36,369 nucleotides of DNA from Platydemus manokwari (GCA_037951405.1 JBBMOY010000013.1:1-36369); one strand, 5' to 3'. Counted from the first letter of the stretch, positions 9,503 through 36,369 are shown. The notes: generated by a model from the sequence alone, not told the origin. Numbers and translations are program-made.

Positions 9503-9867
9503 AAGGCATAATTCGTGGTAAATCTCAGGCTACCTTAACGGGTAGTCTTACCATAACACGCGACATCGTTAAGAAACAGTCCTATGCTCATCAAGACCAA
9601 CTTGTTATATTCAGACTGAAAGAAGAGTATCCTGAATTCGATCTCCGTGTCTTTGCCACAATCGTTTCTACCATTGCAGTACAAGACGGCTTTAGGGTAC
9701 CACTTTCTCAGTTCAGAGAACTAGTAAGGAAAGAGTTGTTTAAACTGGTCACGGTTATTTTCCCTGATCATGTTTACAACAAAGATACAAACGTTCATAC
9801 ACTTTACGATACCGTCTTTCAATTCATGGAAGACCGTGATAACAAAATTAAAGCATACAAGGGCTAA
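9499..9867 (+). CDS. Hypothetical protein
   Basis: 122-aa ORF, ATGA overlap. Confidence 0.75.
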   Translation: MKGIIRGKSQATLTGSLTITRDIVKKQSYAHQDQLVIFRLKEEYPEFDLRVFATIVSTIAVQDGFRVPLSQFRELVRKELFKLVTVIFPDHVYNKDTNVHTLYDTVFQFMEDRDNKIKAYKG

Positions 9868-9871
9868 TAGA

Positions 9872-10648
9872 ATGGACAAGATCATTCCTGGTAAAGAAGT
9901 GATTCTTCTGTCTGAAGAATCAATGAAAGTAGTTGAAGAAGCAATCGCTAATCCTCCAGCTCCTAGTGCAAAACTGCGTGAACTGATGAATCGCCCTCGG
10001 CGCATTAACGTTGAGGACTTTTTCGTGAATCCGGTTCCTAAGCACGAAAACGATAGTCGTACATTGATGACCATTATTAAAGGTCGTGCAACCCCAGCGG
10101 ATAAAATTAAATTAGCAGTATCCAAAGGTGAACTTATCCCACCCACTCGTACCTTCCAACCTCTGGTAGACGTGGGAGTTCCAGAAACAATGGCGCAGAA
10201 GCTAAACCTTCAGCTGATGGTTGATTACTTTCTGAAAGATCAAGAAGGTAGTTTCCAAGACGCTATTAAGGAAATGGCAGCTCGTATTAAACTCCGTCAC
10301 GGTAACTGGTGTGTTGAGGTTTATAAACCGATGAAGCCGGATACTAAAATCTGGGGAGAGCGGATTGAAGGATACATGCAGCTGGCTGTTTATCAGAACT
10401 TCATCAAACAAGGTCTGTACGAACCTGCGGCATTTAAACGAATGCAGGAAATGAAGGAAGATATCAAGTTCTATGCAGATGCACTAAAACGCGACATTAA
10501 AATTAAGGACGAAGGTGATGCTGTTCACTGGATTACCTGGGGTACCTTAGCTTTGTGTGTTATTTCCCCCTTACTTGATCGTGGGGTCGTTGATCACTCC
10601 AAGGTCGTGTTCTTCTATGAGAAGAAAGCTAAACTTAACCTGAGCTGA
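9872..10648 (+). CDS. Hypothetical protein with N-terminal DUF1778/AtaR-antitoxin-like peptide
   Basis: Likely ATG at 9872, just after the upstream stop; EVILLSEESMKVVEEAIANPPAPSAKLRELM. Confidence 0.75.
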   Translation: MDKIIPGKEVILLSEESMKVVEEAIANPPAPSAKLRELMNRPRRINVEDFFVNPVPKHENDSRTLMTIIKGRATPADKIKLAVSKGELIPPTRTFQPLVDVGVPETMAQKLNLQLMVDYFLKDQEGSFQDAIKEMAARIKLRHGNWCVEVYKPMKPDTKIWGERIEGYMQLAVYQNFIKQGLYEPAAFKRMQEMKEDIKFYADALKRDIKIKDEGDAVHWITWGTLALCVISPLLDRGVVDHSKVVFFYEKKAKLNLS

Positions 10649-23564: not shown

Positions 23565-23596
23565 TAGCTACTCTACCCAAATGGGTAGAGTAGCTA
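23565..23596. terminator. Terminator hairpin between convergent operons
   Basis: Perfect 14-bp stem TAGCTACTCTACCC-AAAT-GGGTAGAGTAGCTA. Confidence 0.85.
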
Positions 23597-23619
23597 GTTT
23601 AATCACTTATTTATTTTTG

Positions 23620-24288
23620 TTACTGGAACTGAACATCAAAACGATTGGTCGGGATTTCACCATCGTTAATGTTGGTATTCAGAACCACGTCAGTTTGCAG
23701 AGTGAACGGAGTACCACCATGCGTACCAGTAACCGTAACAGCAGCAGTTGCAGTAACCACAGCGTCAGTAGCAGACTGGATAGATTTGAACGTGTAAGTA
23801 CCACCTTCACTGGAGAACTCAAACTTATCAGCGATGCTTTCAGGAGTAACGGTAACACCGGTTACAGAACTGGTGATGTCCTCAGCGCCTTTCATTACTT
23901 TAAATGTCAGGTTCTGAGTGGCCCACAGGTTCATTGTCAGCGGAGTACTAACATCAGAAAGCGCTGCCGCTTCAACAACATTAATGGTCAGACTAACTGT
24001 CTTGGTAGACTTACCCCAGTTTTCAGTATCGGCATGTTCAGCACCTGCATCAGCATATTTGAATACAACCGTTGCATCTTGAACACCCACAGCAACTGCG
24101 GTCATTACGAATGATACAGTACCTGCACCAGTATCTGGGGTACCAGCACCCAGAGTGATCAGACCTTTCAGATCACTAGCTGCTTCATCAATGGTAACTT
24201 TGCCAGGAACACCAACACCTTCGAAAGTAGGTTTGATGACCATTGCAGAGACTTGACCATTATCAAGCGTATACGACTTATCGCTCAT
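23620..24288 (-). CDS. Small two-domain Ig-like virion fibre protein (candidate self-polymerising major subunit)
   Basis: 222 aa, T/V/A-rich beta protein; TAAGGA SD; C-terminal half aligns with that of 24302-25549. Confidence 0.75.
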   Translation of the reverse strand: MSDKSYTLDNGQVSAMVIKPTFEGVGVPGKVTIDEAASDLKGLITLGAGTPDTGAGTVSFVMTAVAVGVQDATVVFKYADAGAEHADTENWGKSTKTVSLTINVVEAAALSDVSTPLTMNLWATQNLTFKVMKGAEDITSSVTGVTVTPESIADKFEFSSEGGTYTFKSIQSATDAVVTATAAVTVTGTHGGTPFTLQTDVVLNTNINDGEIPTNRFDVQFQ

Positions 24289-24301
24289 TTTATATCCTTA
24301 A

Positions 24302-25549
24302 TTATAGAAACTCAACGTTGAACCGATTGGTTGGAATCTCGCCGTTGTTTATTTCCGTTGTTAAACTCACGGTCTGACTCATAACATGCTCCGTACCACC
24401 ATCCATAAAGGTGAAGTTTAATGTAGCAGAAGCAGTCAACTGAGCAGTGGTTGAAGAAGAGATTGCTTTAATACCCCAACTGTCATCAGAGAGTTTCACC
24501 AGTTCATATTTGGACGAAACTTCTGGAGTGTCAGTCATGGTGATGTTTGAGATTGGACCACTGATATCTGCACCATTATTGGTAATAGTAAATGCCAGAG
24601 GTTTGGTTTCCCACAACTTAAGTGTCAATGGGGTAGGGGTAATGGTAATTCCCGGCGCATAGATTCTGCTTGGGACATTAACGGTGGAAATATTTTTACC
24701 TACAATCAAGTCGGTAGTTGAAGTTCCTAGTGATATTCTCAGATCCTGTTCCGATACTTGATCTGGAGCGGTTAGTTCAATTTCAAAACGATTTAATAAA
24801 GTTCCACCAGTTCCGCCAGATGTAAATGGATAAATTGTAGAATGTGCTTTCAAGAAAGAGACATTCTTAACTGGGTTATAGTAACCTTTATAGAAAATAT
24901 CAATAAAGATACTTTTCTTAGTTCCTTTAGCAACAAGGAATGGTGTCGGGTCTTTATATTCAGCTTTGATTTGTGTTCCATCATAAGGCGCAATAATAAA
25001 GTTACCACTTGCATTCCGGACCATTTGAGCTGGATCTATCGACGCCGGAAGCTTGAATGTGTAATCTACAGTAACAGTTTTCTCAGGGCCTACAGCTACC
25101 TGAGCCAACCACCAATATTTATTCATGGCAACTGGAGTGCCTGGAGCATATGAGTAATCCAGAATTTCAGGAACAGCACCACGAGTCACATCAGTCAACT
25201 GACTGGTAACATCGACACCGTCATGCCAAACTTGGAATGGTAATGCATTGCCATTTTCCCAAGCTTTAACATGAAGATCTGCCGGACGAACTTCGTAATC
25301 AACTTGGACTACGGTATGTTTAAATGTACAAGGGACCTTAACTTCATAGCGCCCCTGGTATGTAAATGTGAGGTTCAGGTTGTATAACGCCTCTTGTGTA
25401 ACCCCGCCCTTAAATTCATAGGTGATCGAGTCATCCTGAATAGAAGCGATCTGGACGCTCGGGTGAGCGTCCAGTGTGATTACCATTTGAGGATCATTAT
25501 TACTAATTACCTGACCAGCTATACGAACACTACTTTTTAGCGTGGTCAT
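24302..25549 (-). CDS. Ig-like repeat virion fibre protein (candidate adaptor)
   Basis: 415 aa; N-terminus like 25561-29049, C-terminus like 23620-24288. Confidence 0.75.
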   Translation of the reverse strand: MTTLKSSVRIAGQVISNNDPQMVITLDAHPSVQIASIQDDSITYEFKGGVTQEALYNLNLTFTYQGRYEVKVPCTFKHTVVQVDYEVRPADLHVKAWENGNALPFQVWHDGVDVTSQLTDVTRGAVPEILDYSYAPGTPVAMNKYWWLAQVAVGPEKTVTVDYTFKLPASIDPAQMVRNASGNFIIAPYDGTQIKAEYKDPTPFLVAKGTKKSIFIDIFYKGYYNPVKNVSFLKAHSTIYPFTSGGTGGTLLNRFEIELTAPDQVSEQDLRISLGTSTTDLIVGKNISTVNVPSRIYAPGITITPTPLTLKLWETKPLAFTITNNGADISGPISNITMTDTPEVSSKYELVKLSDDSWGIKAISSSTTAQLTASATLNFTFMDGGTEHVMSQTVSLTTEINNGEIPTNRFNVEFL

Positions 25550-25560
25550 TCATGATTCCT

Positions 25561-28500
25561 TTATTCTGGAAGTTTAACGTTTTGAACAACGGTAACAGTT
25601 TGCTTACTATTACCTTCGATGTCCTTAATGAATCCATCGCCAAGTTCGAGAGGATACATTCCTACAGTTAATTGAATACTTGCTGGATATTCAAACTCAC
25701 CATCTTTAATAGTGAATGAGAACAATGCAGTACCCGCAGCTTTAGCTGTAGCATTGAAGGAGATCGTGCCGTCATTGTTGTTGACGAGATCTGCAACAGT
25801 AAACAGGTTATTCTCAACAGTCGGATTCAAAATCTGGGTATTTGCCAGGTTCTCAGATGGATCACCCCAACGGTTCTGATGGATCTGCAACGTAACCGGA
25901 GTTACGAGATTAGGTCCTAACAGAGTGTTGTCGTTGTTGGTTACAACGATAGGTGTTTTGTTGACTTGTACAGAAATGCTACCATTACGGTACAATCCAT
26001 CAATATCACTCAGGTGAAGCATCTTGATTCTAGCATAATCACCGGTCCAACCAGTTTTAAGATCGAAACTGAAATCAGCCGTATTTCCAACCTGAACAGC
26101 TTTAGCAGTATCCTTATTAAAGAAAGGATTTCCGGTAACAGGGTTATTATAGTTACGTTGCCAAATTAACTTACCCGTCATTGGAGAGTTATCAAGCCCG
26201 TTTAGGAACTTATCATTAACAACAGCTTCCGTACTACCCTCTCTGGTTTGACGTACGCCAAAGTTGATGTTGGAGTTCATGTTGGCACCAGCTGTCTTGT
26301 TGATATCCAACCTGACATCGGCTTGGTCCAGTTCACCATAAGTATATGAAGGATCGGAAATCAACCGATACTTAATATAGAACCCTTTGAACCCATCAGT
26401 ATCTTGTCGTATCTTAATGAAGAGTTTCCCTTCATCATCAACACCGACAATCTCAGGTAGTTCTGCAACATCTCTTGTTGAAAGAGAGTAATCAATATCT
26501 GGATCTGTAGGATCCATCTCAATGCCGTCTTTCAAGAATACCAGTTTTTGTGGTGTACCATTTCTATTTCTCAGCATCGGGTTGATAGAGAAACGACGAC
26601 CTTCAACTATACCGCTACCGTTATACACCATAAACTTTCTAGATGTAATATAAACGCTAGCTGTATCGTCGGCAGTCAATCCAGCGTTTGGTGCACCTTC
26701 TTTAATGGTGTATGTCAGCTTAACAGTTTGGTTCTCAAGCTCTGTCCCAGCAGAGCTGGTCAAGATCACATCACAGTACCCACCTTGGGTGGTAACGGAT
26801 TTAACAGTTATGGTTGGGTTATCAGAAACAACTTCGATAACGTCCCCACCTAAGTTAACTCCACCCATCTGTGCAACCGCTCTAACCATTATGTCAGAAT
26901 CAGACTTACCGTAAACGGTTTTATACTGAGGTTGGATTACAACGCTTAGACCTTCAATAGCTTGAAGCTCGATTCGTTTAGGATAGTGAACATTATTCTC
27001 AACAACGGAGTACGTTACAGAACCTGCGCCTTTAGTACCATTACCGGTAACGGTAATTTTGAATGTACCATTCTCGTTAACAACCGTAGCAGCTTTAACA
27101 GTCCCATCAACACTTATATTCCGGATATCAGTAGAGGTTGCAAAGTTCCAATCTTCTTGACCCAAACGTTCCTGAGACCAAGTAACAAAGACATCAGTCT
27201 TAACACCATCAACAAAGTTGAAGTTGTTGTTCAGGACCGTGGCTGTGATAGGTGCTTGGGCAACTAACTGACTACCCGTTGCTTTGTAGACAATGTTACC
27301 ACCAGGGAGACGAACATATTCGGTCATTTCCGCCAGGGCACCAGTCCAGCCTGTCTTAACATTACGACCAAACCCTATGTTGTTTGTAGTGGTAGGTTTA
27401 TCGAGAAGTTCGATAATTGCGTTACCTGTACTTGGGTTGTTAACGTATTTAGACAGCAAGACTTTATCAACTGTTATATCAGCGGAACCAATTTGATATT
27501 TGTTGTTCATGACAACAGTTTCTTGGTTTGGAGGCAAACTACCTGCTAGTGTGTAGGTACAGTCAGTTACCGCGGCGCCGGTTGGGATGGTAATGATTGG
27601 GGTTGTGGTACCTACACCAGGAACGCCATCGATGGTGATTTGATATTGAATACCTGCTGAGGTTGCAGCACCGGTATAAATCAATTTACCGATAAATCCA
27701 CCATCATACTTATCGATGTATTGGCCAGTTGCTTGAGAAGCTGTAGCCACTACAATCTTAACTTTAGGATCATCAACTTTATATTCCACGCCATTACCAT
27801 CAGAAATGGTAATTGGGTAATCGAAGTATCCTTGTTTCTTGATTGACATATCCCTGCTAGGTGGAAGTACAGTTACCTGTTGCATCGACTTAACAATAAT
27901 AGACTGCATTTGCGTTGTAGATGCACCACCATAACCATAAGTGATATTGGTGAAGTTGTTAATATCGGCGCCAGTGTTGTTGGCATCGAGTATCTTAAAT
28001 GTAACAACTTTTCCAACTTTGGATACCACAGATAACCTGGCTGGATTGGCAATCGTAATCTCTACGTCTTCCATAGAAAGTTGAACACCATCCATAGAAA
28101 TAGTTATGGTCTGTTCAACTTCCTGATTTTGCTTACCAGTTAGTACGGCAGGATTTCTAGCATTAAATACAAGACCTGGCTCATAAGCTTTCATGTCGAC
28201 TTTAATATCAACACGGTTTTTACCTACTACACTGTTTGTGCCATTACCGCCGAATACTAACGTACCTTCACCAGTAAAGCTAGCGCTAGCACCAAACGTT
28301 ACCCAGATCTGCTGCGTATCTTTCTTCAGGTCTTGGCTGGAATAGTTAATTGGTGCAGTTGAAGCGAAGTTTTGTAGGTAACGGACGTAATCAGTGCCAT
28401 CACGATAGTTACGATATTTGAAGGAGAACTTAAGCGGTGTTAACGTCCCAACAGGAATCTTGAACTCTTCAAACAGCGGAGTGATGGTTAACTCTTGTCC

Positions 28501-29049
28501 GTCGTAAGTTGCTACGATAAACTCACCAGTAAATGAACGAGTTACCCCTGGGAGATCATCACTTAAACGGAAAGTGTAATCGATGTTGATAGTAGTCTGG
28601 CTAAATGCCGACTCAGATTCGATAGTCCAAGACTTAGAACCTGTATCACCTGCTTTAACAATGCTCTTAGGTGTAAATGCAACGTCCACCACATTTGCAG
28701 TAACGTCTTCACCACCTTTACTTACCGTAAATGGTAAGGCATCACCACGTGCCCAACACTGTGTGTTAATAGGAGCAGAAGTAATAGTAACTTTAGACTC
28801 TGTACCCATGTTAACCAACGACAGAGGTTGCTCAAGGGTATACAGTTCTTTATATACGAAAGACAGACTAAGGTTGTAGAGGGTGTCCGTGGGGACACCC
28901 TCTTTAAACGAGTATGTAATATAGTCATCACCGATCTCGGAGATTTCGACTTTCGCCGCATCAGCTCCAGTCAGGGTAATGACCATATTGGGATCGTTAT
29001 TACTTAGGGCCTGTCCATCGAGTAACATTGCTTGTTTTAATGTACTCAT
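25561..29049 (-). CDS. Large Ig-like repeat virion fibre protein
   Basis: 1162 aa of ~90-100-aa beta-rich repeats; NNPxTGN..KTGWTG occurs twice. Confidence 0.75.
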   Translation of the reverse strand: MSTLKQAMLLDGQALSNNDPNMVITLTGADAAKVEISEIGDDYITYSFKEGVPTDTLYNLSLSFVYKELYTLEQPLSLVNMGTESKVTITSAPINTQCWARGDALPFTVSKGGEDVTANVVDVAFTPKSIVKAGDTGSKSWTIESESAFSQTTINIDYTFRLSDDLPGVTRSFTGEFIVATYDGQELTITPLFEEFKIPVGTLTPLKFSFKYRNYRDGTDYVRYLQNFASTAPINYSSQDLKKDTQQIWVTFGASASFTGEGTLVFGGNGTNSVVGKNRVDIKVDMKAYEPGLVFNARNPAVLTGKQNQEVEQTITISMDGVQLSMEDVEITIANPARLSVVSKVGKVVTFKILDANNTGADINNFTNITYGYGGASTTQMQSIIVKSMQQVTVLPPSRDMSIKKQGYFDYPITISDGNGVEYKVDDPKVKIVVATASQATGQYIDKYDGGFIGKLIYTGAATSAGIQYQITIDGVPGVGTTTPIITIPTGAAVTDCTYTLAGSLPPNQETVVMNNKYQIGSADITVDKVLLSKYVNNPSTGNAIIELLDKPTTTNNIGFGRNVKTGWTGALAEMTEYVRLPGGNIVYKATGSQLVAQAPITATVLNNNFNFVDGVKTDVFVTWSQERLGQEDWNFATSTDIRNISVDGTVKAATVVNENGTFKITVTGNGTKGAGSVTYSVVENNVHYPKRIELQAIEGLSVVIQPQYKTVYGKSDSDIMVRAVAQMGGVNLGGDVIEVVSDNPTITVKSVTTQGGYCDVILTSSAGTELENQTVKLTYTIKEGAPNAGLTADDTASVYITSRKFMVYNGSGIVEGRRFSINPMLRNRNGTPQKLVFLKDGIEMDPTDPDIDYSLSTRDVAELPEIVGVDDEGKLFIKIRQDTDGFKGFYIKYRLISDPSYTYGELDQADVRLDINKTAGANMNSNINFGVRQTREGSTEAVVNDKFLNGLDNSPMTGKLIWQRNYNNPVTGNPFFNKDTAKAVQVGNTADFSFDLKTGWTGDYARIKMLHLSDIDGLYRNGSISVQVNKTPIVVTNNDNTLLGPNLVTPVTLQIHQNRWGDPSENLANTQILNPTVENNLFTVADLVNNNDGTISFNATAKAAGTALFSFTIKDGEFEYPASIQLTVGMYPLELGDGFIKDIEGNSKQTVTVVQNVKLPE

Positions 29050-29064
29050 GGATTTTACAGTTCC

Positions 29065-32000
29065 TTATTCAGGGTTAAGTACAAATTGTGTTAACGTCAC
29101 AGGATTATCAACGTCACCTTGCCCAGTGGATTGGAATCCTGGTGCTGGGGTCAACTTAGGATGCAGAGATTGCTGAGTAACATTCAAAATTGCGGTGGCA
29201 ATTTCCTTCTTACTCCAAATGCCTGAGAAACCGAATTGAACATTGGTGGTCTTAGCATTTTCAGTGATGTCCCTAACAAACCTAACATCAAAGCTATCCT
29301 TGGTTACTGACCCAGGTACCAACTCAATCACGTCAGATGGAGTGCATCCTTCCCAATCGTGAGTGGTTAGATCTCTTTGAATACCAGCATAGTTACCACG
29401 GGCGTGGATGGTGAATACATCACCAAACTTGCCAGTTATCTCTTTAGGTACCGGTTCCGTTAATTGGAATGGAGCTGCCGTGCTGTAAACAGTTAGCTCT
29501 ACAGGAACTTCGAACTCCCCAGTTGGATTACCCTCAACCCCACCATCAATTCTGATTCTGAAATTTTGGATACCAAATGCAGTCACGATGTTACTAGATT
29601 TAGCGGTAATTTGAAGCTTGGTATTAAACTCCGTTGTGCTAATCATCGATACATAACGCGGACCATCACCATACCCAGACCATCTAACCATCTTGACTAT
29701 TGTATCTCCTTTATATAGGGGAACAATGTTAAACCAAGCTTGGGAACCAAGAGTGAATGTGGTAGTACCTTCAATTTTAAATGTGTAAGGACTTCCGTCA
29801 TAAGCAGCAATGTTAAACGGAACTTCTACCGTTCTCTTAAATCCTGATGGATCTGTAGATAAACGATAGTACCATGTCGACATTACCACCTTAGCAGGTT
29901 GAGCGGCTTCAGCGATAATCTGATAAGTAGGTCTTGGAGAAACATTAATCATGTTCTCATTATCAACAAGTTCGACATCGTAAAGACCCTGAGGTATATC
30001 GCTTGAGTCAACCACTTGGAAAGGGGTTTTGGATGACTTGTCCCAAACCTTAACATCCATCTGGGTAAGTTTGACGAACATGTTCGGTTTAACTGTCAGA
30101 TCTATTTCGTGTATGGCAAAACGACCATCACGATCAGTAACCTTCAGTGTAACAACCTCGTTAATGTCCTCTGTTGTTGTCATCGCAACATCGAAACTGA
30201 CATCCCCAGCATTACGCATACCCAAAGTCATGTAATCAGCCGGTTCAACATTCCACGTTAATCCAACATCATCAAAACGACGATTATTGCCATCGATAGT
30301 CAATGTACCAGTAAAGGTAATCCGATCTCCTTTCTTACCGGAGGCAGAATCAGGACTTAGGGTCAGAACAAAACCAGAAGAATCGATTTCCGCCGTAACG
30401 TCCAGAGTGACTTGATATTCATATCCATCGCCATCGGTTACAGTGAATGTAGCACTACCAGCTCCGGTTTCACCTTTACCATAGAAGGTAGCGGTAAATG
30501 TTCCATCGCTGTTACCGATCGTATCGACTTTCTGAATAGCCCCAGTTATAGTTACTGTATCAGAAATCGTTGCATCAGAGAACGTGTAATGTTCTACAAT
30601 GTCATTGATTAAACGTTCTTGCGATAGAGTAAATGTCATAGCCTTGCTAGCATTGGTAATGCCATTAATAACCCTATCAGCACCACCAACTGTAATTGTA
30701 GCTGGAGGAATAATCAGTTCAGAATCACGCAATACCCAGTTATCAGCAAGGTCAGGGAATACCGCAACCATGTTTATGGTAATTTTCCCACCCGTCCAAC
30801 CGGACTTAAACTTCAGTGCATTGCGATAAATATCACCAGGTGCCTCTATAAGTTCAAGTTCGCCAAGTAAAGCATTACCCGTTGAAGGATTGTTTTTACC
30901 TGATAATGATAGAACAGTTGTAGGTTTGGCGATATTGTAACCTGATCTTTGGAATTCAACAGGGATAATGTTCTCTGCATTACCCAAAGGCTCCTTCAAA
31001 GCTTTTAACGTTACTGGGACTAAGTTAGTCATACTGTAACTTGCTTGAATGTTAACATACCCCGATATCTCAGGTGGATTAACACCATCGTTATACGTCA
31101 CCATAATACGGTTAGTAAACGATGCAGCAGCATCTGGTTTGCGATTAAAAGCGAACCAAACGTATCGATCTTCAATCCCAACAATATCAAAGATTGGTGG
31201 AGTAACTGTCGACGCATTACTGACTTCCATAGACAAACGAGGGGCATTTGGCTTAAGTAACACACCACCGTAATAAATCTTGGCATCCCAACTGAATGGT
31301 CTAGCATAAACTTGGGTAGAAGGAACCAGTGTGATTGGAAGTACGGATAGCCCTTTGTTAACATAAATACCTGTAAAATTACCAACCCATTTATTCACAT
31401 TAACTGTGGTGCCTGGTGTATCATCAATCGTGAGAGTTAATACACATGCATTACTTCCTGATCCAAATGTGTCAGGTGCGGTATACTCAATGACTACCCC
31501 AACTCCATCACCAGCAGGTCCCACTATAGTTATAGGTACTGTGAATAAAGTACCAACTTGAACAGTCCCACTAAATCCATTTGCTAATGGCTTCCCTCTA
31601 TACACAGGCCAAACCGTAAACCGGTTGGTGTTGTTACGTGATACAGGAATTTCTGTAGTTACCCCAACACCACGGCCATAGTCAACGGTTACCTTAAATG
31701 CAATGCCATCATAGGCCGCTACGTTGTAATTACCACGAGCAGTAAGCGTTTCCCAAATTCCATTAACTTTGGCTTCATACGTGAAGTATTGTGGGAATAA
31801 GGTTTCAGTTGTTCTTCCATCAACAACTTCCCATGAATTAGGATCGTCAGGTAATGGAGAGAAATATTGTCCATTCTTGATCAATCTAACATTTCTGATT
31901 TGATCATTTATCAATACGCCATTGTTATATACATCAAACGGTGGAGTATTTAGAACATCAAACACTTTGACTTGGACAGTCTTCTCAGTTGTCGTAATCT

Positions 32001-33636
32001 TGTTAGCAAATGAAGCCTGTACGATGACACTGAAATCCATCTCAGTTCCACCTGTTGGTTTAAACTTACCATAAATCCGTACATCGCCCTCAGAACCTCT
32101 AGCGGCTAACTGTTGTGACATCTGGCCGTTTTTGAGGTTTGTCCCACTTGTACTAGCAGCAGCCCCTTCAACGTAAACCATGGAGAAATCACCAGGGATA
32201 AGTTCTAATCCATTTCCTCGATCTTGTTTACAAGAAATCAGAACAGCAGAATTAGCACCCGCATTACCGTTAACAGTTTTAGTATTGGTGGTGAAAACAT
32301 ATGGGGCTTCAGGAATATCGAATCCTGAATCAGAGACTAACATCGGATAATACCAGTCCCTTGGATAGCTTTTGGCAATATACGGACAACGAATCACCAC
32401 ATTAGTAAAGAGAGCACGCTGTGCCATCCAACTAGGTTTAGTTTCGGCAACAACCCTACCGATGGAATTAACTTTCTTACCGGATAAATCAACGGTTTGG
32501 ATGATAGTATTTGTGGAGGTATCAGTTATCCTCAATTCACCTTTTTCAAATACAGCGTCAAAAGGTTCAAACCAAGCATAAGGGATCGTGGTGGTTAAAT
32601 CACCTATTTGTACAACAGCATTTACTTCTTTATTGGCAACAGGACCTATAAGGAAGTTAGACATATAGAAGTTATTAGGACCAGAGTATGTCGTAACGCT
32701 TAGCTTTTGAACTGCTGTTTTTGCTCCCTTTGTGACCGTCAAATCGACGTTACCCATTGGAGGATTACTGGAACTAGCAGGCGGTTGTTTTAATGTCCAT
32801 TTAATACCATCTGACTGGACTGTAATTCCAAGACGGTTGTTAGGACTTGACATGTTACCAGCATCGGTTAATGTGTAACTTATAGACGGGTCGGTTAGTG
32901 AAAGCTTTGTGGTTCCCTCATAAAGTTCGAAGAACGACATCGCCTTGTAGCTTAGAACACCGGAAAAGTTTACACTGTACCAGTCCCACATGACTATAAC
33001 CAGATCTGTATTCCCTGCCACGATAATTTTTGCACGGGCAATCAGGTTAACAAAGTTTTTGTCTGATACAGGATTTGAGGGTACCGGAAGTCTATTGACT
33101 CTTATCGGTAACCCTGCTAAGGCATTAACAGTTGCTCCAACGAGAACAATGCGGTGCGTTACGCCATCTTCTAAAACTTCTTGACGAACTATAGAGACTC
33201 CTGGGTAAGGTGTCAGGCCGGTAACTGAAAGGGTTGCTTCCACCTCACCAGCTTTCAGTAATACACCTTTATAGGTGGCCTGATAGTCTAAAGTAAATTC
33301 CTTATTCTGCTCTGATACCACCACGCCCGTACTTGGATTGGTAAAATTTACTTTGAACTGTCCTGCTGTAGTTGCAGATACAGTTATATCAGTGGAAGCT
33401 TCCAATTCATAAGGAAGTCCACCATAATCAACTTCTAGTTTAAATGTTGTCGCTTCGGTAACGTCTTCTTCATCGGCAGCAATAACGGTGAATGTGGCAT
33501 CACCGTTCGGCTTCAAATAGGGGGAGGGAACTCCCCCTTGCTCGATTGCTGTCAGACGGATATTGTTAGTAATATCTTCGCCCGAAATAGGATCGTTAAC
33601 CTGAAACGGAACAAGTGAAGATTTGTTCAATTCCAC
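29065..33636 (-). CDS. Large Ig-like repeat virion fibre protein
   Basis: 1523 aa; GTG start with AGGA SD; recurrent VKV[WF], AAYDG, SQER and GWTGG motifs. Confidence 0.75.
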   Translation of the reverse strand: MELNKSSLVPFQVNDPISGEDITNNIRLTAIEQGGVPSPYLKPNGDATFTVIAADEEDVTEATTFKLEVDYGGLPYELEASTDITVSATTAGQFKVNFTNPSTGVVVSEQNKEFTLDYQATYKGVLLKAGEVEATLSVTGLTPYPGVSIVRQEVLEDGVTHRIVLVGATVNALAGLPIRVNRLPVPSNPVSDKNFVNLIARAKIIVAGNTDLVIVMWDWYSVNFSGVLSYKAMSFFELYEGTTKLSLTDPSISYTLTDAGNMSSPNNRLGITVQSDGIKWTLKQPPASSSNPPMGNVDLTVTKGAKTAVQKLSVTTYSGPNNFYMSNFLIGPVANKEVNAVVQIGDLTTTIPYAWFEPFDAVFEKGELRITDTSTNTIIQTVDLSGKKVNSIGRVVAETKPSWMAQRALFTNVVIRCPYIAKSYPRDWYYPMLVSDSGFDIPEAPYVFTTNTKTVNGNAGANSAVLISCKQDRGNGLELIPGDFSMVYVEGAAASTSGTNLKNGQMSQQLAARGSEGDVRIYGKFKPTGGTEMDFSVIVQASFANKITTTEKTVQVKVFDVLNTPPFDVYNNGVLINDQIRNVRLIKNGQYFSPLPDDPNSWEVVDGRTTETLFPQYFTYEAKVNGIWETLTARGNYNVAAYDGIAFKVTVDYGRGVGVTTEIPVSRNNTNRFTVWPVYRGKPLANGFSGTVQVGTLFTVPITIVGPAGDGVGVVIEYTAPDTFGSGSNACVLTLTIDDTPGTTVNVNKWVGNFTGIYVNKGLSVLPITLVPSTQVYARPFSWDAKIYYGGVLLKPNAPRLSMEVSNASTVTPPIFDIVGIEDRYVWFAFNRKPDAAASFTNRIMVTYNDGVNPPEISGYVNIQASYSMTNLVPVTLKALKEPLGNAENIIPVEFQRSGYNIAKPTTVLSLSGKNNPSTGNALLGELELIEAPGDIYRNALKFKSGWTGGKITINMVAVFPDLADNWVLRDSELIIPPATITVGGADRVINGITNASKAMTFTLSQERLINDIVEHYTFSDATISDTVTITGAIQKVDTIGNSDGTFTATFYGKGETGAGSATFTVTDGDGYEYQVTLDVTAEIDSSGFVLTLSPDSASGKKGDRITFTGTLTIDGNNRRFDDVGLTWNVEPADYMTLGMRNAGDVSFDVAMTTTEDINEVVTLKVTDRDGRFAIHEIDLTVKPNMFVKLTQMDVKVWDKSSKTPFQVVDSSDIPQGLYDVELVDNENMINVSPRPTYQIIAEAAQPAKVVMSTWYYRLSTDPSGFKRTVEVPFNIAAYDGSPYTFKIEGTTTFTLGSQAWFNIVPLYKGDTIVKMVRWSGYGDGPRYVSMISTTEFNTKLQITAKSSNIVTAFGIQNFRIRIDGGVEGNPTGEFEVPVELTVYSTAAPFQLTEPVPKEITGKFGDVFTIHARGNYAGIQRDLTTHDWEGCTPSDVIELVPGSVTKDSFDVRFVRDITENAKTTNVQFGFSGIWSKKEIATAILNVTQQSLHPKLTPAPGFQSTGQGDVDNPVTLTQFVLNPE

Positions 33637-33652: not shown

Positions 33653-36369
33653 TTATTCTGGATTAAGAACACCCTGTTTAAGAGTCACAGGATTCTCCAT
33701 ATCCCCAGAGCCTGTTGATTCGAAACCAGGAGCTGGCGTTAGTTTAGGATGAGCTGCAAGCTGTCTAGCTGTGAACGTGGTTCGTCCAGTGCCTTCTGTC
33801 ATGTAGCGCATACTAACTGTCATTTCTGTATCTTTACTGTTCTCCGTGATATCGGCAAGGAACCTGACTTTAAACCCATCGGCGGTTCTAGACCCAGGGA
33901 CCATCTCCACAATACCAGCAGGAGTGAATGCAGGATCTTGCCATGATGGATTGTTCACGTCATTGCGATTACCACTAAGCCAAACTTTAATGGTGACCGG
34001 TATTTCCTCACCAAATCTACCCACTAAAGGATTCGGTTTAAAATCACTTAATGCACTTCGGTTATAGAAATCATAAATAGTGATGATAAATGTAACAGTA
34101 ACTATATCTTGGCCAGGCACACTTCCAGTACCAACACGGATTGAATACGAGTTCGGTATTTCAAACGTGTTACTCGTATTAACTGACCTAAATGTGAATC
34201 TTCCTTGTCCTTCGAAGTTGGTGTAATCCGCGGTGGCGATGGAAGGAGCACTAATAGGTCCGATATTTGTGGGTTTCTCGGTGACTGGTTCAGCCCTACG
34301 GTAAACGAAGAAGTCACCCTGGAATTGAGAGCTTGCAACATATCTGTAAAGAGGGTACTGTGGAACTGCCGTTAATATATAACCGTTATGTGCTTCAACG
34401 TTATAAGTAATATCGATTGTTCTCTTCGTTCCTTCCAAATCAGTAGGTAAACGGTATTCCCAAGTCACCACTTCGGTTCTGGCCGGTAACACGCCTTCAC
34501 CTTTCACAGTCCACATGTTCACAGCCGGTTTATTCCTGTTCTCCATCTTAACGGCGATTACAACATCGTCATTAATTGGTTTGCAGTCCAATACCGTATC
34601 TGTGATATCAACTTCACCTTCCTTCATTACGAAAGGATAACCGTTAATACGTTCCCAGACCTTAACGTTGAACACCTTAGGTTCGATGGTCAAGTTTTTC
34701 TTAACGTTAACCGTTACCGGTTGGGAAACTGTCATACCTAAGAAATTGGCAGTGACATTAACTACTTGGGTTACGTCGTCAGGGGAGTTACGCACAATAC
34801 GAAGATCAAACGTTCCAGCAGTACCATTCTCAAATTCAACCCAACCTTCATGTTCAACCGAGTAGATCATGTTCCCATTGGAATTATCCCAACGAAGATC
34901 TGTGTCGTTATACTTCACTGTACCGGTAATCGTTGTCACGTCACCAGCGACACCTTCTACAACGTTGTTCTCCAGAACCATTGACATCGGGCTTGAATCG
35001 ATGACTGCATTAACATTCAGAACGATATCAATACTTTCCCCATCGTCATCCGTGATCGTCATGGTTATCGTCCCAGGACCCTGAGTACCATTACCATAAA
35101 CGTCAACAAAGAAGGTTCCTTTGTTGTTAAAGGCGGCAGAAGCTTGTTTAACTGACCCGGTAACAACTCCGACAGGATAAATCTCGGCATTGGTAAAGTT
35201 GTAGTTGGTTGTTACACCATTCACCCTACGCTGTTGGGATAATGTAAACCGAATCTCAGTCTTACGATTCTCTATCCCGTCAATTTGATTTGTGGCTTGA
35301 GTTACGTCTACTGGTACCGGAGGTACTTTAATTATAACAGGTTGTGTCGAATAAACGGTTGGGAATTCCCAGGTACCAAGATAGAATATCTCACCACCTT
35401 TCCAACCAGAATCGAACTTCAAAGCGCCCTCAGGTAAGTACTCAACCCCGTTGACCGCAACATCAGAACCAGCAGGAGTTATTTTTACGTTCGCCCTTCC
35501 AATTAACTTAGGAGCTGGGAAAGGAGAAAGAGGATCAACGTAGAACTTGGTTGGTAATGTGTTTTCGGCGTTAGCGACTGGATCACCAATGACTTCCATA
35601 ATTGGAATGGTGGTAGCTCCACTGCTAAATCCAATTGTTAATGCAGATGGTACTGTGGAATGCACTGTCCCGTCAGGAGCTGTATATTTAACTGTCGCTA
35701 ACTGATACCAACTAGCCGAACCTGTGGCAGCTCTATACGTAAACAGATAAATAGTTGTTGCGTCCGAACCCGCATACTCAACAAACTTAGCTTGGTTTGG
35801 ATGACCTTCAATCACGTAATCCAAACGAGGGTCATCAAGTTTCAGTCTGACAGCATCAAAGTAGACGGCCGGTTGCCAGTTCCTGGTACTACCCAATCCT
35901 CCATAACTAGGAGTAGGTGAGGAATGTTCGACATACAGACCTTTCTGAATAGCAGTGAGCGTTACCGTTTCACTCACAACGGTTTTTTGGTTAACCAATT
36001 CCTCAATGGGAATCCCTTTAACCTGATAATAGAACGTGATGGAGGCGGTCGTATAGTTGGTACCGATACCCAATGTTACAACAATACCGGTTCCTTCATC
36101 GTTAACCTTCTGTCCTTTGAACTCAATGCCGGTTCGAGTAATTGGTCTCAGCTCGATATTTTCAAGATCAAGTTTGCCCTTATATTGAGGGTAGAAGGTA
36201 TAGGTATACGTCCCACCTAAAGGAACCTTCGGATTCTTACTCGTTCTGTCCCCAGGGATGTACTCGGCATTGGGGACGATCGCAATCCCATTCCACGCTG
36301 CAATATCGTAACTACCCTGACCGATTTGATTAATGACGCCGCTGGCTAGAACCAGATCATAAGTAAAGT
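33653..36369 (-). CDS. Large Ig-like repeat virion fibre protein (5' end outside window)
   Basis: I read the frame from 36073 to the window end and found no stop; collinear with the C-terminal part of 29065-33636. Confidence 0.75.
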   Translation of the reverse strand, partial: FTYDLVLASGVINQIGQGSYDIAAWNGIAIVPNAEYIPGDRTSKNPKVPLGGTYTYTFYPQYKGKLDLENIELRPITRTGIEFKGQKVNDEGTGIVVTLGIGTNYTTASITFYYQVKGIPIEELVNQKTVVSETVTLTAIQKGLYVEHSSPTPSYGGLGSTRNWQPAVYFDAVRLKLDDPRLDYVIEGHPNQAKFVEYAGSDATTIYLFTYRAATGSASWYQLATVKYTAPDGTVHSTVPSALTIGFSSGATTIPIMEVIGDPVANAENTLPTKFYVDPLSPFPAPKLIGRANVKITPAGSDVAVNGVEYLPEGALKFDSGWKGGEIFYLGTWEFPTVYSTQPVIIKVPPVPVDVTQATNQIDGIENRKTEIRFTLSQQRRVNGVTTNYNFTNAEIYPVGVVTGSVKQASAAFNNKGTFFVDVYGNGTQGPGTITMTITDDDGESIDIVLNVNAVIDSSPMSMVLENNVVEGVAGDVTTITGTVKYNDTDLRWDNSNGNMIYSVEHEGWVEFENGTAGTFDLRIVRNSPDDVTQVVNVTANFLGMTVSQPVTVNVKKNLTIEPKVFNVKVWERINGYPFVMKEGEVDITDTVLDCKPINDDVVIAVKMENRNKPAVNMWTVKGEGVLPARTEVVTWEYRLPTDLEGTKRTIDITYNVEAHNGYILTAVPQYPLYRYVASSQFQGDFFVYRRAEPVTEKPTNIGPISAPSIATADYTNFEGQGRFTFRSVNTSNTFEIPNSYSIRVGTGSVPGQDIVTVTFIITIYDFYNRSALSDFKPNPLVGRFGEEIPVTIKVWLSGNRNDVNNPSWQDPAFTPAGIVEMVPGSRTADGFKVRFLADITENSKDTEMTVSMRYMTEGTGRTTFTARQLAAHPKLTPAPGFESTGSGDMENPVTLKQGVLNPE

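What the first reader, a model, noticed from the sequence alone, without database searches (positions are those of the whole stretch)
23620..24370. Last and smallest gene has both the acceptor N-terminus and matching donor tail: candidate self-polymerising 'major pilin'
Seen: the 222-aa product ends INDGEIPTNRFDVQFQ, 12/16 identical to the tail of the upstream gene (INNGEIPTNRFNVEFL). No gene follows it before the terminator. Its own N-terminus is the only visible acceptor for this tail type in the window. Inference: it can chain to copies of itself to make the shaft, with the 415-aa protein acting as an adaptor that converts the NPE/LPE junction type to the TNRF type. It should then be far more abundant in virions than the large subunits.
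Basis: partly seen in the sequence, partly recalled or inferred. Interest (0 to 1): 0.85.

Follow-up and report, generated by a model that had tools for sequence, protein, structure and literature searches.

The report
Last link of a jumbo-phage fibre chain
The small last gene of a cluster of giant immunoglobulin-like genes in a phiKZ-related jumbo phage has a conserved docking tail and a matching receiving head, so it is probably a link in a head-to-tail protein chain; it may stack on itself, but that is not shown.

Summary
A 222-aa gene (23620-24288, minus strand) ends a five-gene minus-strand cluster, and a hairpin terminator follows it. Its last 16 residues match 12/16 residues of the upstream 415-aa protein.

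The window comes from a phiKZ-related jumbo phage close to Shewanella phage SXP01. In 19 related genomes and contigs, the fibre genes carry a small set of N-terminal "heads" and C-terminal "tails" that follow each other in gene order.
- All 24 genes that follow an "IPTNRF"-type tail start with a "KPTFEG"-type head.
- In three cases the tail arginine has become glutamate, and in exactly those three the head glutamate has become arginine. This charge swap argues for direct tail-to-head docking.
- AlphaFold gives two Ig-like domains plus an unstructured, invariant 17-residue tail.
- In 8 of 13 genomes the 222-type gene is the last fibre gene. The SXP01 genome has no other matching head, so self-stacking is plausible.

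Self-stacking is unproven. In five genomes a different head-bearing protein follows the 222-type gene, five relatives lack the gene altogether, and the OBP record does not label its homologue a virion protein. The family is not DUF7941, the filament family recently described in phage Goslar; the resemblance is by analogy only.

The parts
23620..24288 (-). Gene for the 222-aa protein: N-terminal 'B head' Ig-like domain, second Ig-like domain, and C-terminal 'Y tail'
   Evidence: 24 homologues at 51-96% identity; AlphaFold2 mean pLDDT 90.9
23974..24288 (-). B-head domain (residues 1-105). Contains the invariant K19, F22 and E23 of the KPTFEG motif and is the proposed acceptor.
23674..23967 (-). 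Second Ig-like domain (residues about 108-205), homologous to the last domain of the 415-aa protein
23623..23673 (-). Y tail (residues 206-222). It is invariant in the family and predicted unstructured; it is the proposed donor peptide.
23565..23596 (.). Hairpin with a 14-bp stem between the convergent genes; terminator-like
24302..25549 (-). Gene for the 415-aa adaptor: 'A head' (about 25310-25549), four beta domains, and Y tail (24305-24352)
25561..29049 (-). Gene for the 1162-aa Ig-like fibre protein, with A head and 'X tail' ending LPE
29065..33636 (-). Gene for the 1523-aa fibre protein, with a variant head and X tail ending NPE
33653..36369 (-). 3' part (905 codons) of a further fibre gene that is cut by the window end, with X tail. 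It is the homologue of the SXP01 1533-aa gene. The listed '806-aa ORF' is only part of it.

Best explanation
The five minus-strand genes encode thin fibres made of strings of Ig-like domains. The separate proteins are joined end to end, non-covalently. Each protein ends in a short, unstructured but strongly conserved tail peptide. That tail docks, probably as an added beta strand, on the N-terminal Ig-like domain (the head) of the protein encoded by the next gene. Tails ending NPE or LPE go with the 'TLKQ...NDP' head. The IPTNRF tail goes with the KPTFEG head.

The 415-aa protein switches from the first junction type to the second. The 222-aa protein is the last link and carries both the KPTFEG head and the IPTNRF tail. 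In this phage no other protein offers that head. The most economical reading is that the tail of one 222-aa molecule docks on the head of another, giving a short or long homo-oligomeric end segment after the 415-aa adaptor.

Shown: the gene order, the head and tail types, the covariation, the fold, and the lack of another acceptor. Inferred: physical docking, self-association, the number of copies, and presence on the virion. Which end of the chain sits on the virion is not known.
For: Gene-order rule: in 19 genomes and contigs, all 24 genes that follow an IPTNRF-type tail begin with a KPTFEG-type head.

Charge swap: the tail R and head E are found together in 21 junctions. In 3 junctions (Yubaba, L019, L020) the tail has E and the head has R. 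No junction is mixed (Fisher p 5e-4, not corrected for phylogeny).

Tail conservation: 11 of the 46 invariant columns of the family lie in the last 20 residues. Over 13 tail codons, amino-acid identity is 0.91 but third-position identity is 0.54, so selection acts on the protein.

Structure: AlphaFold2 gives two confident Ig-like domains, with the tail unstructured (pLDDT 58 falling to 45). The tail of the 415-aa protein is also unstructured.

Position: the tail module sits at the extreme C-terminus in all 28 representative clusters, in proteins of 95 to 4123 aa.

Context: the 222-type gene is the last fibre gene in 8 of 13 contexts, and its tail motif is kept in all of them.

No other acceptor: the whole SXP01 genome holds no other N-terminal head of this type (E 7e-41 for its own head; only weak internal matches elsewhere).

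Precedent: Goslar gp22 and gp23 form head-to-tail filaments through a disordered segment that docks on the next N-terminal domain (PMC13742148).

Codon usage: the 222-aa gene is the most 'capsid/sheath-like' of 12 window genes.
Against: No complex could be predicted or observed here, so docking and self-association are inferences.

The three charge-swapped junctions belong to one clade, so they probably reflect a single evolutionary event.

In 5 of 13 contexts a different head-bearing protein follows the 222-type gene. There the tail has a hetero-partner and one copy would be enough.

Five relatives lack the 222-type gene and go straight from the adaptor to the terminal protein.

OBP_203 to OBP_207 are labelled 'hypothetical protein' in a record that labels virion structural proteins. 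I could not read the OBP proteome paper.

The N1M2 paper saw no tail fibres by EM.

The SXP01 homologue ranks only 32nd of 181 ORFs on the codon-usage proxy.

Fibre length here is already provided by giant proteins, which weakens the need for a polymerising shaft.
Confidence: 0.4

Rival explanations
1. The 222-aa protein is a single-copy terminal link or spacer. One copy docks on the adaptor's tail. Its own tail either binds the terminal head-bearing protein where one exists, or binds some other partner not recognised here. There is no homopolymer.
For: In 5 of 13 contexts a head-bearing terminal protein follows directly (OBP_203, AH04_194, L017, L018, L023). Five relatives do without the 222-type gene. 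Length is supplied by giant proteins of up to 5119 aa. OBP_204 is not labelled as a virion protein.
Against: The tail motif stays invariant in the 8 contexts with no following acceptor. SXP01 has no other head of this type anywhere in its genome. This reading therefore needs an unknown partner.
Confidence: 0.27
2. The polarity is reversed. The conserved small protein is the virion-proximal adaptor. Its tail binds a conserved baseplate or tail protein, its head receives the adaptor's tail, and the giant proteins extend outwards.
For: The 222-type protein is the best-conserved member of the cluster, at 51-67% identity across phages of Shewanella, Erwinia, Kosakonia, Pseudomonas and Edwardsiella, while its neighbours vary from 201 to 5119 aa. 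Conserved parts of phage fibres are usually the ones attached to the virion (general knowledge of tail fibres).
Against: The N-terminus of the first giant protein is also strongly conserved across genera, and that fits a virion anchor at the other end. The same tail motif demonstrably pairs with heads, not with a virion protein. In five genomes another fibre-type protein follows.
Confidence: 0.13
3. The 222-aa protein is a non-structural assembly factor (fibre chaperone). It binds the adaptor's tail transiently and is not kept in the virion.
For: A small last gene after fibre genes is the usual place for fibre assembly chaperones (general knowledge). OBP_204 is not labelled as a virion protein.
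Against: It is built from the same Ig-like domain and tail as the fibre proteins. It shares its head with the longer terminal proteins. It matches no chaperone family in Pfam or PHROGs. A chaperone would not need its own invariant donor tail.
Confidence: 0.08
4. The conserved ends are not docking sites. They are conserved gene boundaries that serve module exchange by recombination, or they have an unrelated role such as sorting or processing.
For: The head-coding start of the 415-aa gene is conserved at the nucleotide level with phages of other genera: 87-95% identity over 40-76 nt, in genes that are otherwise not alignable.
Against: For the tail, third codon positions are only 0.54 identical while amino acids are 0.91 identical. 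The charge swap between tail and next head is not expected from recombination linkers.
Confidence: 0.05

Closest known systems
Chimallivirus DUF7941 filament proteins (Goslar gp22 and gp23; phiKZ gp126 and gp127), PMC13742148
   Same: Found in phiKZ-related jumbo phages. Paralogous proteins are proposed to join head to tail, with a disordered segment of one protomer docking on the N-terminal domain of the next through an intermolecular beta sheet. Small members may polymerise and larger members carry extra domains, giving a network of possible hetero-junctions.
   Different: No sequence relationship. PF25613 detects phiKZ gp126 and gp127 but none of the five window proteins. hhalign probability against gp127 is 0.3%. 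According to that paper, DUF7941 had no fold matches, whereas these proteins are plain Ig-like tandems. Here the donor is the extreme C-terminus. The partners are giant proteins encoded in assembly order, and at least two junction types exist. SXP01 shows no DUF7941 hit in 214 ORFs.
T4 long tail fibre (gp34-gp35-gp36-gp37)
   Same: Several gene products, encoded in order, join end to end into one fibre (general knowledge).
   Different: No homology. T4 fibre proteins are mostly trimeric beta-structures that need dedicated chaperones. No short head and tail code shared by paralogues is known there, and there is no self-compatible subunit.
Donor-strand pili: chaperone-usher pili, Bacteroidia type V pili, archaeal 'threads'
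   Same: Beta-sandwich subunits are chained by a terminal strand given to the neighbour. Type V pilins use C-terminal strands and have two beta-sandwich domains. Adaptor, shaft and tip subunits are distinguished by which ends they carry (general knowledge; the threads paper PMC9715654 appeared).
   Different: The predicted domains here are complete (7 and 9 strands, pLDDT about 90), with no missing strand. There is no signal peptide or lipobox logic and no chaperone, usher or protease partner. None of these pilins is among the top 50 structural matches.
Ig-like domains on phage surfaces (Hoc-type decoration, Big_2 and I-set domains on tail and fibre proteins)
   Same: The fold class is the same, and weak adhesive surface exposure is the likely role. 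Structural matches include phage minor capsid and tail proteins with Ig-like domains.
   Different: Those domains are accessory parts of single proteins. No end-to-end junction code is known for them.

Membership tests
DUF7941 (PF25613) chimallivirus filament proteins | Match to the Pfam model PF25613 | tested here: not met
   No hit at E<=0.1 for any of the five window proteins. Positive control: phiKZ gp126 scores 4e-9 and gp127 scores 1e-27.
DUF7941 (PF25613) chimallivirus filament proteins | Profile-level homology to a solved or modelled member (phiKZ gp127) | tested here: not met
   hhalign of A1 against gp127 gives probability 0.3%. The PDB sequence search found nothing.
DUF7941 (PF25613) chimallivirus filament proteins | A disordered segment that docks on the N-terminal domain of the next protomer | tested here: inconclusive
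   An unstructured invariant tail is seen and covariation with the next head is seen. No complex could be predicted with these tools.
DUF7941 (PF25613) chimallivirus filament proteins | Hundreds of copies per virion; filaments formed by the isolated protein | not testable with these tools
   No proteome or EM data could be reached. The OBP record labels gp204 'hypothetical protein'.
Chaperone-usher pilins | Incomplete Ig fold lacking the last strand, with an N-terminal donor extension | tested here: not met
   Both domains are predicted complete, with 7 and 9 strands. The conserved free peptide is C-terminal.
Chaperone-usher pilins | Adjacent periplasmic chaperone and usher genes | tested here: not met
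   There are no such Pfam hits in the cluster or in ten other window ORFs.
Type V (FimA/Mfa1) pilins | Structural similarity to FimA/Mfa-type two-domain pilins | tested here: not met
   The top 50 PDB matches are titin-type and other generic tandem Ig domains.
Type V (FimA/Mfa1) pilins | C-terminal donor strands inserted after proteolytic removal of an N-terminal strand | not testable with these tools
   A C-terminal donor is plausible. There is no evidence of processing.
T4-type long tail fibre proteins | Homology to gp34-gp37 families or their chaperones | tested here: not met
   No PHROG or Pfam match.
Tail fibre assembly chaperones | Match to a known chaperone family | tested here: not met
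   No PHROG or Pfam match for the 222-aa protein.
Ig-like beta-sandwich fold | Tandem beta-sandwich domains | tested here: met
   AlphaFold2 mean pLDDT is 90.9. Foldseek matches titin Z1Z2 and other tandem Ig domains at E 3e-8, but TM is only about 0.3 over both domains.

The most novel reading that the evidence does not exclude
OBP/pEt-SU-type jumbo phages carry a second filament system that is unrelated in sequence to DUF7941. Giant Ig-like proteins are chained in gene order by a small code of tail peptides and receiving heads, with at least two junction types. The chain ends in a two-domain subunit that polymerises on itself. This system stands in for the DUF7941 'fibre cloud', which this lineage appears to lack.
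Probability: 0.3. Interest if true: 0.8.

Novelty: new variant of a known kind. Interest (0 to 1): 0.6.

Why it matters
It is poorly understood how phiKZ-related jumbo phages find their hosts. A paper from November 2026 proposed that a chimallivirus-specific family, DUF7941, builds long head-to-tail filaments at the baseplate. The cluster studied here suggests that one lineage of these phages (OBP, pEt-SU, SXP01, AH04, Kc263, N1M2 and relatives) reaches a similar design with unrelated Ig-like proteins and a readable junction code. If that is right, the order and composition of a fibre could be read from gene ends alone. The charge-swapped residue pair gives a concrete interface to look for in structures. 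The family has no annotation anywhere: only 28 clusters among 1.8 billion representative proteins match, and all are unnamed.

Tried and rejected
Searches that found nothing useful:
- Pfam and PHROGs gave nothing for the 222-aa and 415-aa proteins.
- The PDB sequence search gave nothing.
- The PDB and viral fold searches returned only generic Ig tandems and unnamed relatives.

Ideas tested and rejected:
- Membership in DUF7941 was rejected, with a positive control.
- I searched all representative hits for a natural fusion of tail and head in one chain, which could have been folded as a single chain. None exists; the tail is always at the extreme C-terminus.
- I suspected that the '806-aa ORF' was a broken gene. 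It is not. The frame is open to the window edge, so the gene is simply cut by the window.

Literature:
- The OBP genome and proteome paper is not held.
- The N1M2, SXP01 and ZPAH34 papers carry no virion proteomics.

Steps not run, or weak:
- No multimer prediction was possible.
- The codon-usage proxy for expression gave only weak support.

I redid the table by reference to loci.

Full report
**What is in the window.**
The minus strand from 23620 to the window end carries five co-directional reading frames separated by 11-16 nt. They encode proteins of 222, 415, 1162 and 1523 aa, plus a fifth gene cut by the window edge. A strong hairpin at 23565-23596 separates the 222-aa gene from a convergent plus-strand gene. 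The plus-strand part of the window encodes replication-type functions, such as an NAD-dependent DNA ligase.

By DNA similarity, the window belongs to a jumbo phage close to Shewanella phage SXP01 (about 90% identity over the matched part). SXP01 carries phiKZ-type hallmarks: PhiKZ_VTX, phiKZ_IP and phage tubulin.

**The observation.**
The last 16 residues of the 222-aa and 415-aa proteins match at 12/16 positions. BLASTP shows that the two proteins are homologous over 133 residues (37% identity, E 9e-22). They therefore share the whole last domain plus the tail. The tail is still significantly better conserved than the rest of that alignment (p 0.0014).

**The family.**
The 222-aa protein has 24 full-length homologues at 51-96% identity. 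These include OBP_204, pEt-SU gp131, AH04 gp195 and Kc263 gp022, and none is named. In their alignment, 11 of the 46 invariant columns fall in the last 20 residues. K19, F22 and E23 near the N-terminus are also invariant.

A scan of 1.8 billion representative proteins finds only 28 clusters. In every one, the shared domain and tail sit at the extreme C-terminus, in proteins ranging from 95 to 4123 aa.

**The fold.**
- AlphaFold2 gives two confident beta-sandwich domains, at residues about 4-103 and 108-205 (mean pLDDT 90.9).
- The last 17 residues have no secondary structure, and confidence falls from 58 to 45.
- The domains look complete, not missing a strand.
- Structural neighbours are generic tandem Ig domains and unnamed relatives.
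- The 415-aa protein folds, at lower confidence, as four beta domains with the same unstructured tail.

**A head and tail code in gene order.**
I compared the window with SXP01, OBP, pEt-SU, AH04, Kc263, Survivor, Yubaba, N1M2 and ten metagenomic contigs. The layout recurs in this order:
1. A first giant protein with its own conserved N-terminus.
2. Zero or more proteins with the 'TLKQ...NDP' head and a tail ending NPE or LPE.
3. One protein with that same head but the IPTNRF tail. This is the adaptor, and it ranges from 201 to 3124 aa.
4. Often a 222-type protein, with KPTFEG head and IPTNRF tail.
5. In some genomes, a last protein with the KPTFEG-type head and a different C-terminal part.

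In two contigs the giant protein carries the IPTNRF tail itself.

All 24 genes that follow an IPTNRF-type tail start with a KPTFEG-type head.

**Evidence for contact.**
In Yubaba and two related contigs the tail reads PKPEF instead of the usual sequence with arginine before the phenylalanine. In exactly those three cases the next head reads PTFRN instead of PTFEG. The counts are 21 R/E pairs, 3 E/R pairs and no mixed pair (Fisher p 5e-4). The three cases belong to one clade, so this is probably a single event. It nevertheless affects two positions that are otherwise invariant.

Selection acts on the protein. Over 13 tail codons in 12 genomes, amino-acid identity is 0.91 and third-position identity is 0.54. 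The tail also has alternating hydrophobic residues (F, V, F), as expected of a strand that packs one face on a sandwich. That last point is my inference from the sequence.

**Does the 222-aa protein stack on itself?**

*For:*
- It carries both matching ends.
- Its gene is the last fibre gene in 8 of the 13 contexts where this can be judged, and the tail motif is kept in all of them.
- An HMM of the head domain finds no other N-terminal head in the window or in the complete 269,939-bp SXP01 genome. Only weak internal Ig-domain matches appear in the first giant protein.
- Heads accept both tail subtypes, since terminal proteins follow either adaptors or 222-type proteins.
- The gene has the most capsid/sheath-like codon usage of 12 window genes.

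*Against:*
- In 5 contexts another head-bearing protein follows.
- Five relatives lack the gene.
- The SXP01 homologue ranks only 32nd of 181 ORFs on the codon proxy.
- The OBP record labels many 'virion structural proteins' but calls OBP_203 to OBP_207 'hypothetical'.
- N1M2 showed no fibres by EM.
- The 1162-aa protein is formally self-compatible too, so the 222-aa protein is not unique in that respect.

I rate self-association, taken together with the docking model as a whole, at about 0.4.

**Comparison with what is known.**
The closest system is the DUF7941 filament family of Goslar and phiKZ. There, a disordered segment of one protomer docks on the next N-terminal domain. gp22 alone forms filaments, and gp22 and gp23 reach hundreds to thousands of copies per virion (PMC13742148).

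Membership in that family fails. PF25613 detects phiKZ gp126 and gp127 but none of the window proteins. The profile comparison is null. SXP01 shows no DUF7941 hit by phmmer or Pfam in 214 ORFs. One caveat applies: any hit weaker than about 5e-4 would not have been displayed in the two batch scans.

Phages of the hosts of this lineage (Shewanella, Edwardsiella, Kosakonia, Pantoea) are also absent from the tblastn hits of phiKZ gp127.

The design also recalls the T4 long tail fibre and donor-strand pili, but the defining features of those families are not met (see the membership table).

**Verdict.**
The head-to-tail reading is well supported by comparative evidence. The adaptor role of the 415-aa protein fits. 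The 'major pilin' claim is plausible but open. The family is uncharacterised, and I found no paper that describes it.

Noticed in passing
window 25448-25523: The start of the 415-aa gene (the head-coding part) is conserved at the DNA level with phages of other genera: 87% identity over 76 nt with Pantoea phage Survivor and 95% over 40 nt with pEt-SU. The rest of these genes does not align by megablast. It may be a hot spot for module exchange.
   Followed up: partly
window 33653-36369: The listed '806-aa ORF' (TTG start at 36073) is not a complete gene. The frame stays open to the window edge (905 codons, no internal stop) and matches residues 626-1533 of the SXP01 1533-aa protein at 57% identity.
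   Followed up: yes
L014 28616-33187 (SXP01 record 178616-183187, minus strand): The SXP01 GenBank record leaves a 4.6-kb stretch unannotated. It holds an intact 1523-aa fibre gene, the counterpart of window 29065-33636.
   Followed up: partly
SXP01 cluster (L014) and window: Heads and tails do not balance one to one. SXP01 has one tail of the first-giant type but two proteins with the matching variant head. It has three NPE/LPE tails but two 'TLKQ' heads. This suggests alternative or branched fibres, or promiscuous junctions.
   Followed up: no
window 23581-24114 (+): A 177-aa ORF lies antisense inside the 222-aa gene. It has no homologue evidence and is most likely spurious.
   Followed up: no
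L013 37551-42662 (SXP01 XTB82753): A 1703-aa protein next to the baseplate gene carries five DUF285 repeats (E 3e-142). It is a candidate receptor-binding protein that is separate from the Ig-like cluster.
   Followed up: no
L021 5815-6204: In one contig the 222-type gene is followed, on the same strand, by a 129-aa DUF1353 protein instead of a head-bearing protein.
   Followed up: no
loci L002, L004, L006, L007, L017-L020, L023: Spacers before 222-type genes are short (13-52 nt). Spacers before the terminal head-bearing genes are longer (59-146 nt), which hints at separate expression control of the terminal protein.
   Followed up: no
window 9770-10648 (+): There is a weak, sub-threshold Pfam match to the TacA1 antitoxin-like domain (E 7e-4, 20.0 bits against a cut-off of 21).
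   Followed up: no
PMC12571629 (SXP01 paper): The paper reports a head about 55 nm across for a 270-kb genome. The related phage N1M2 has a head of about 113 x 101 nm. The micrograph may not show the sequenced phage.
   Followed up: no
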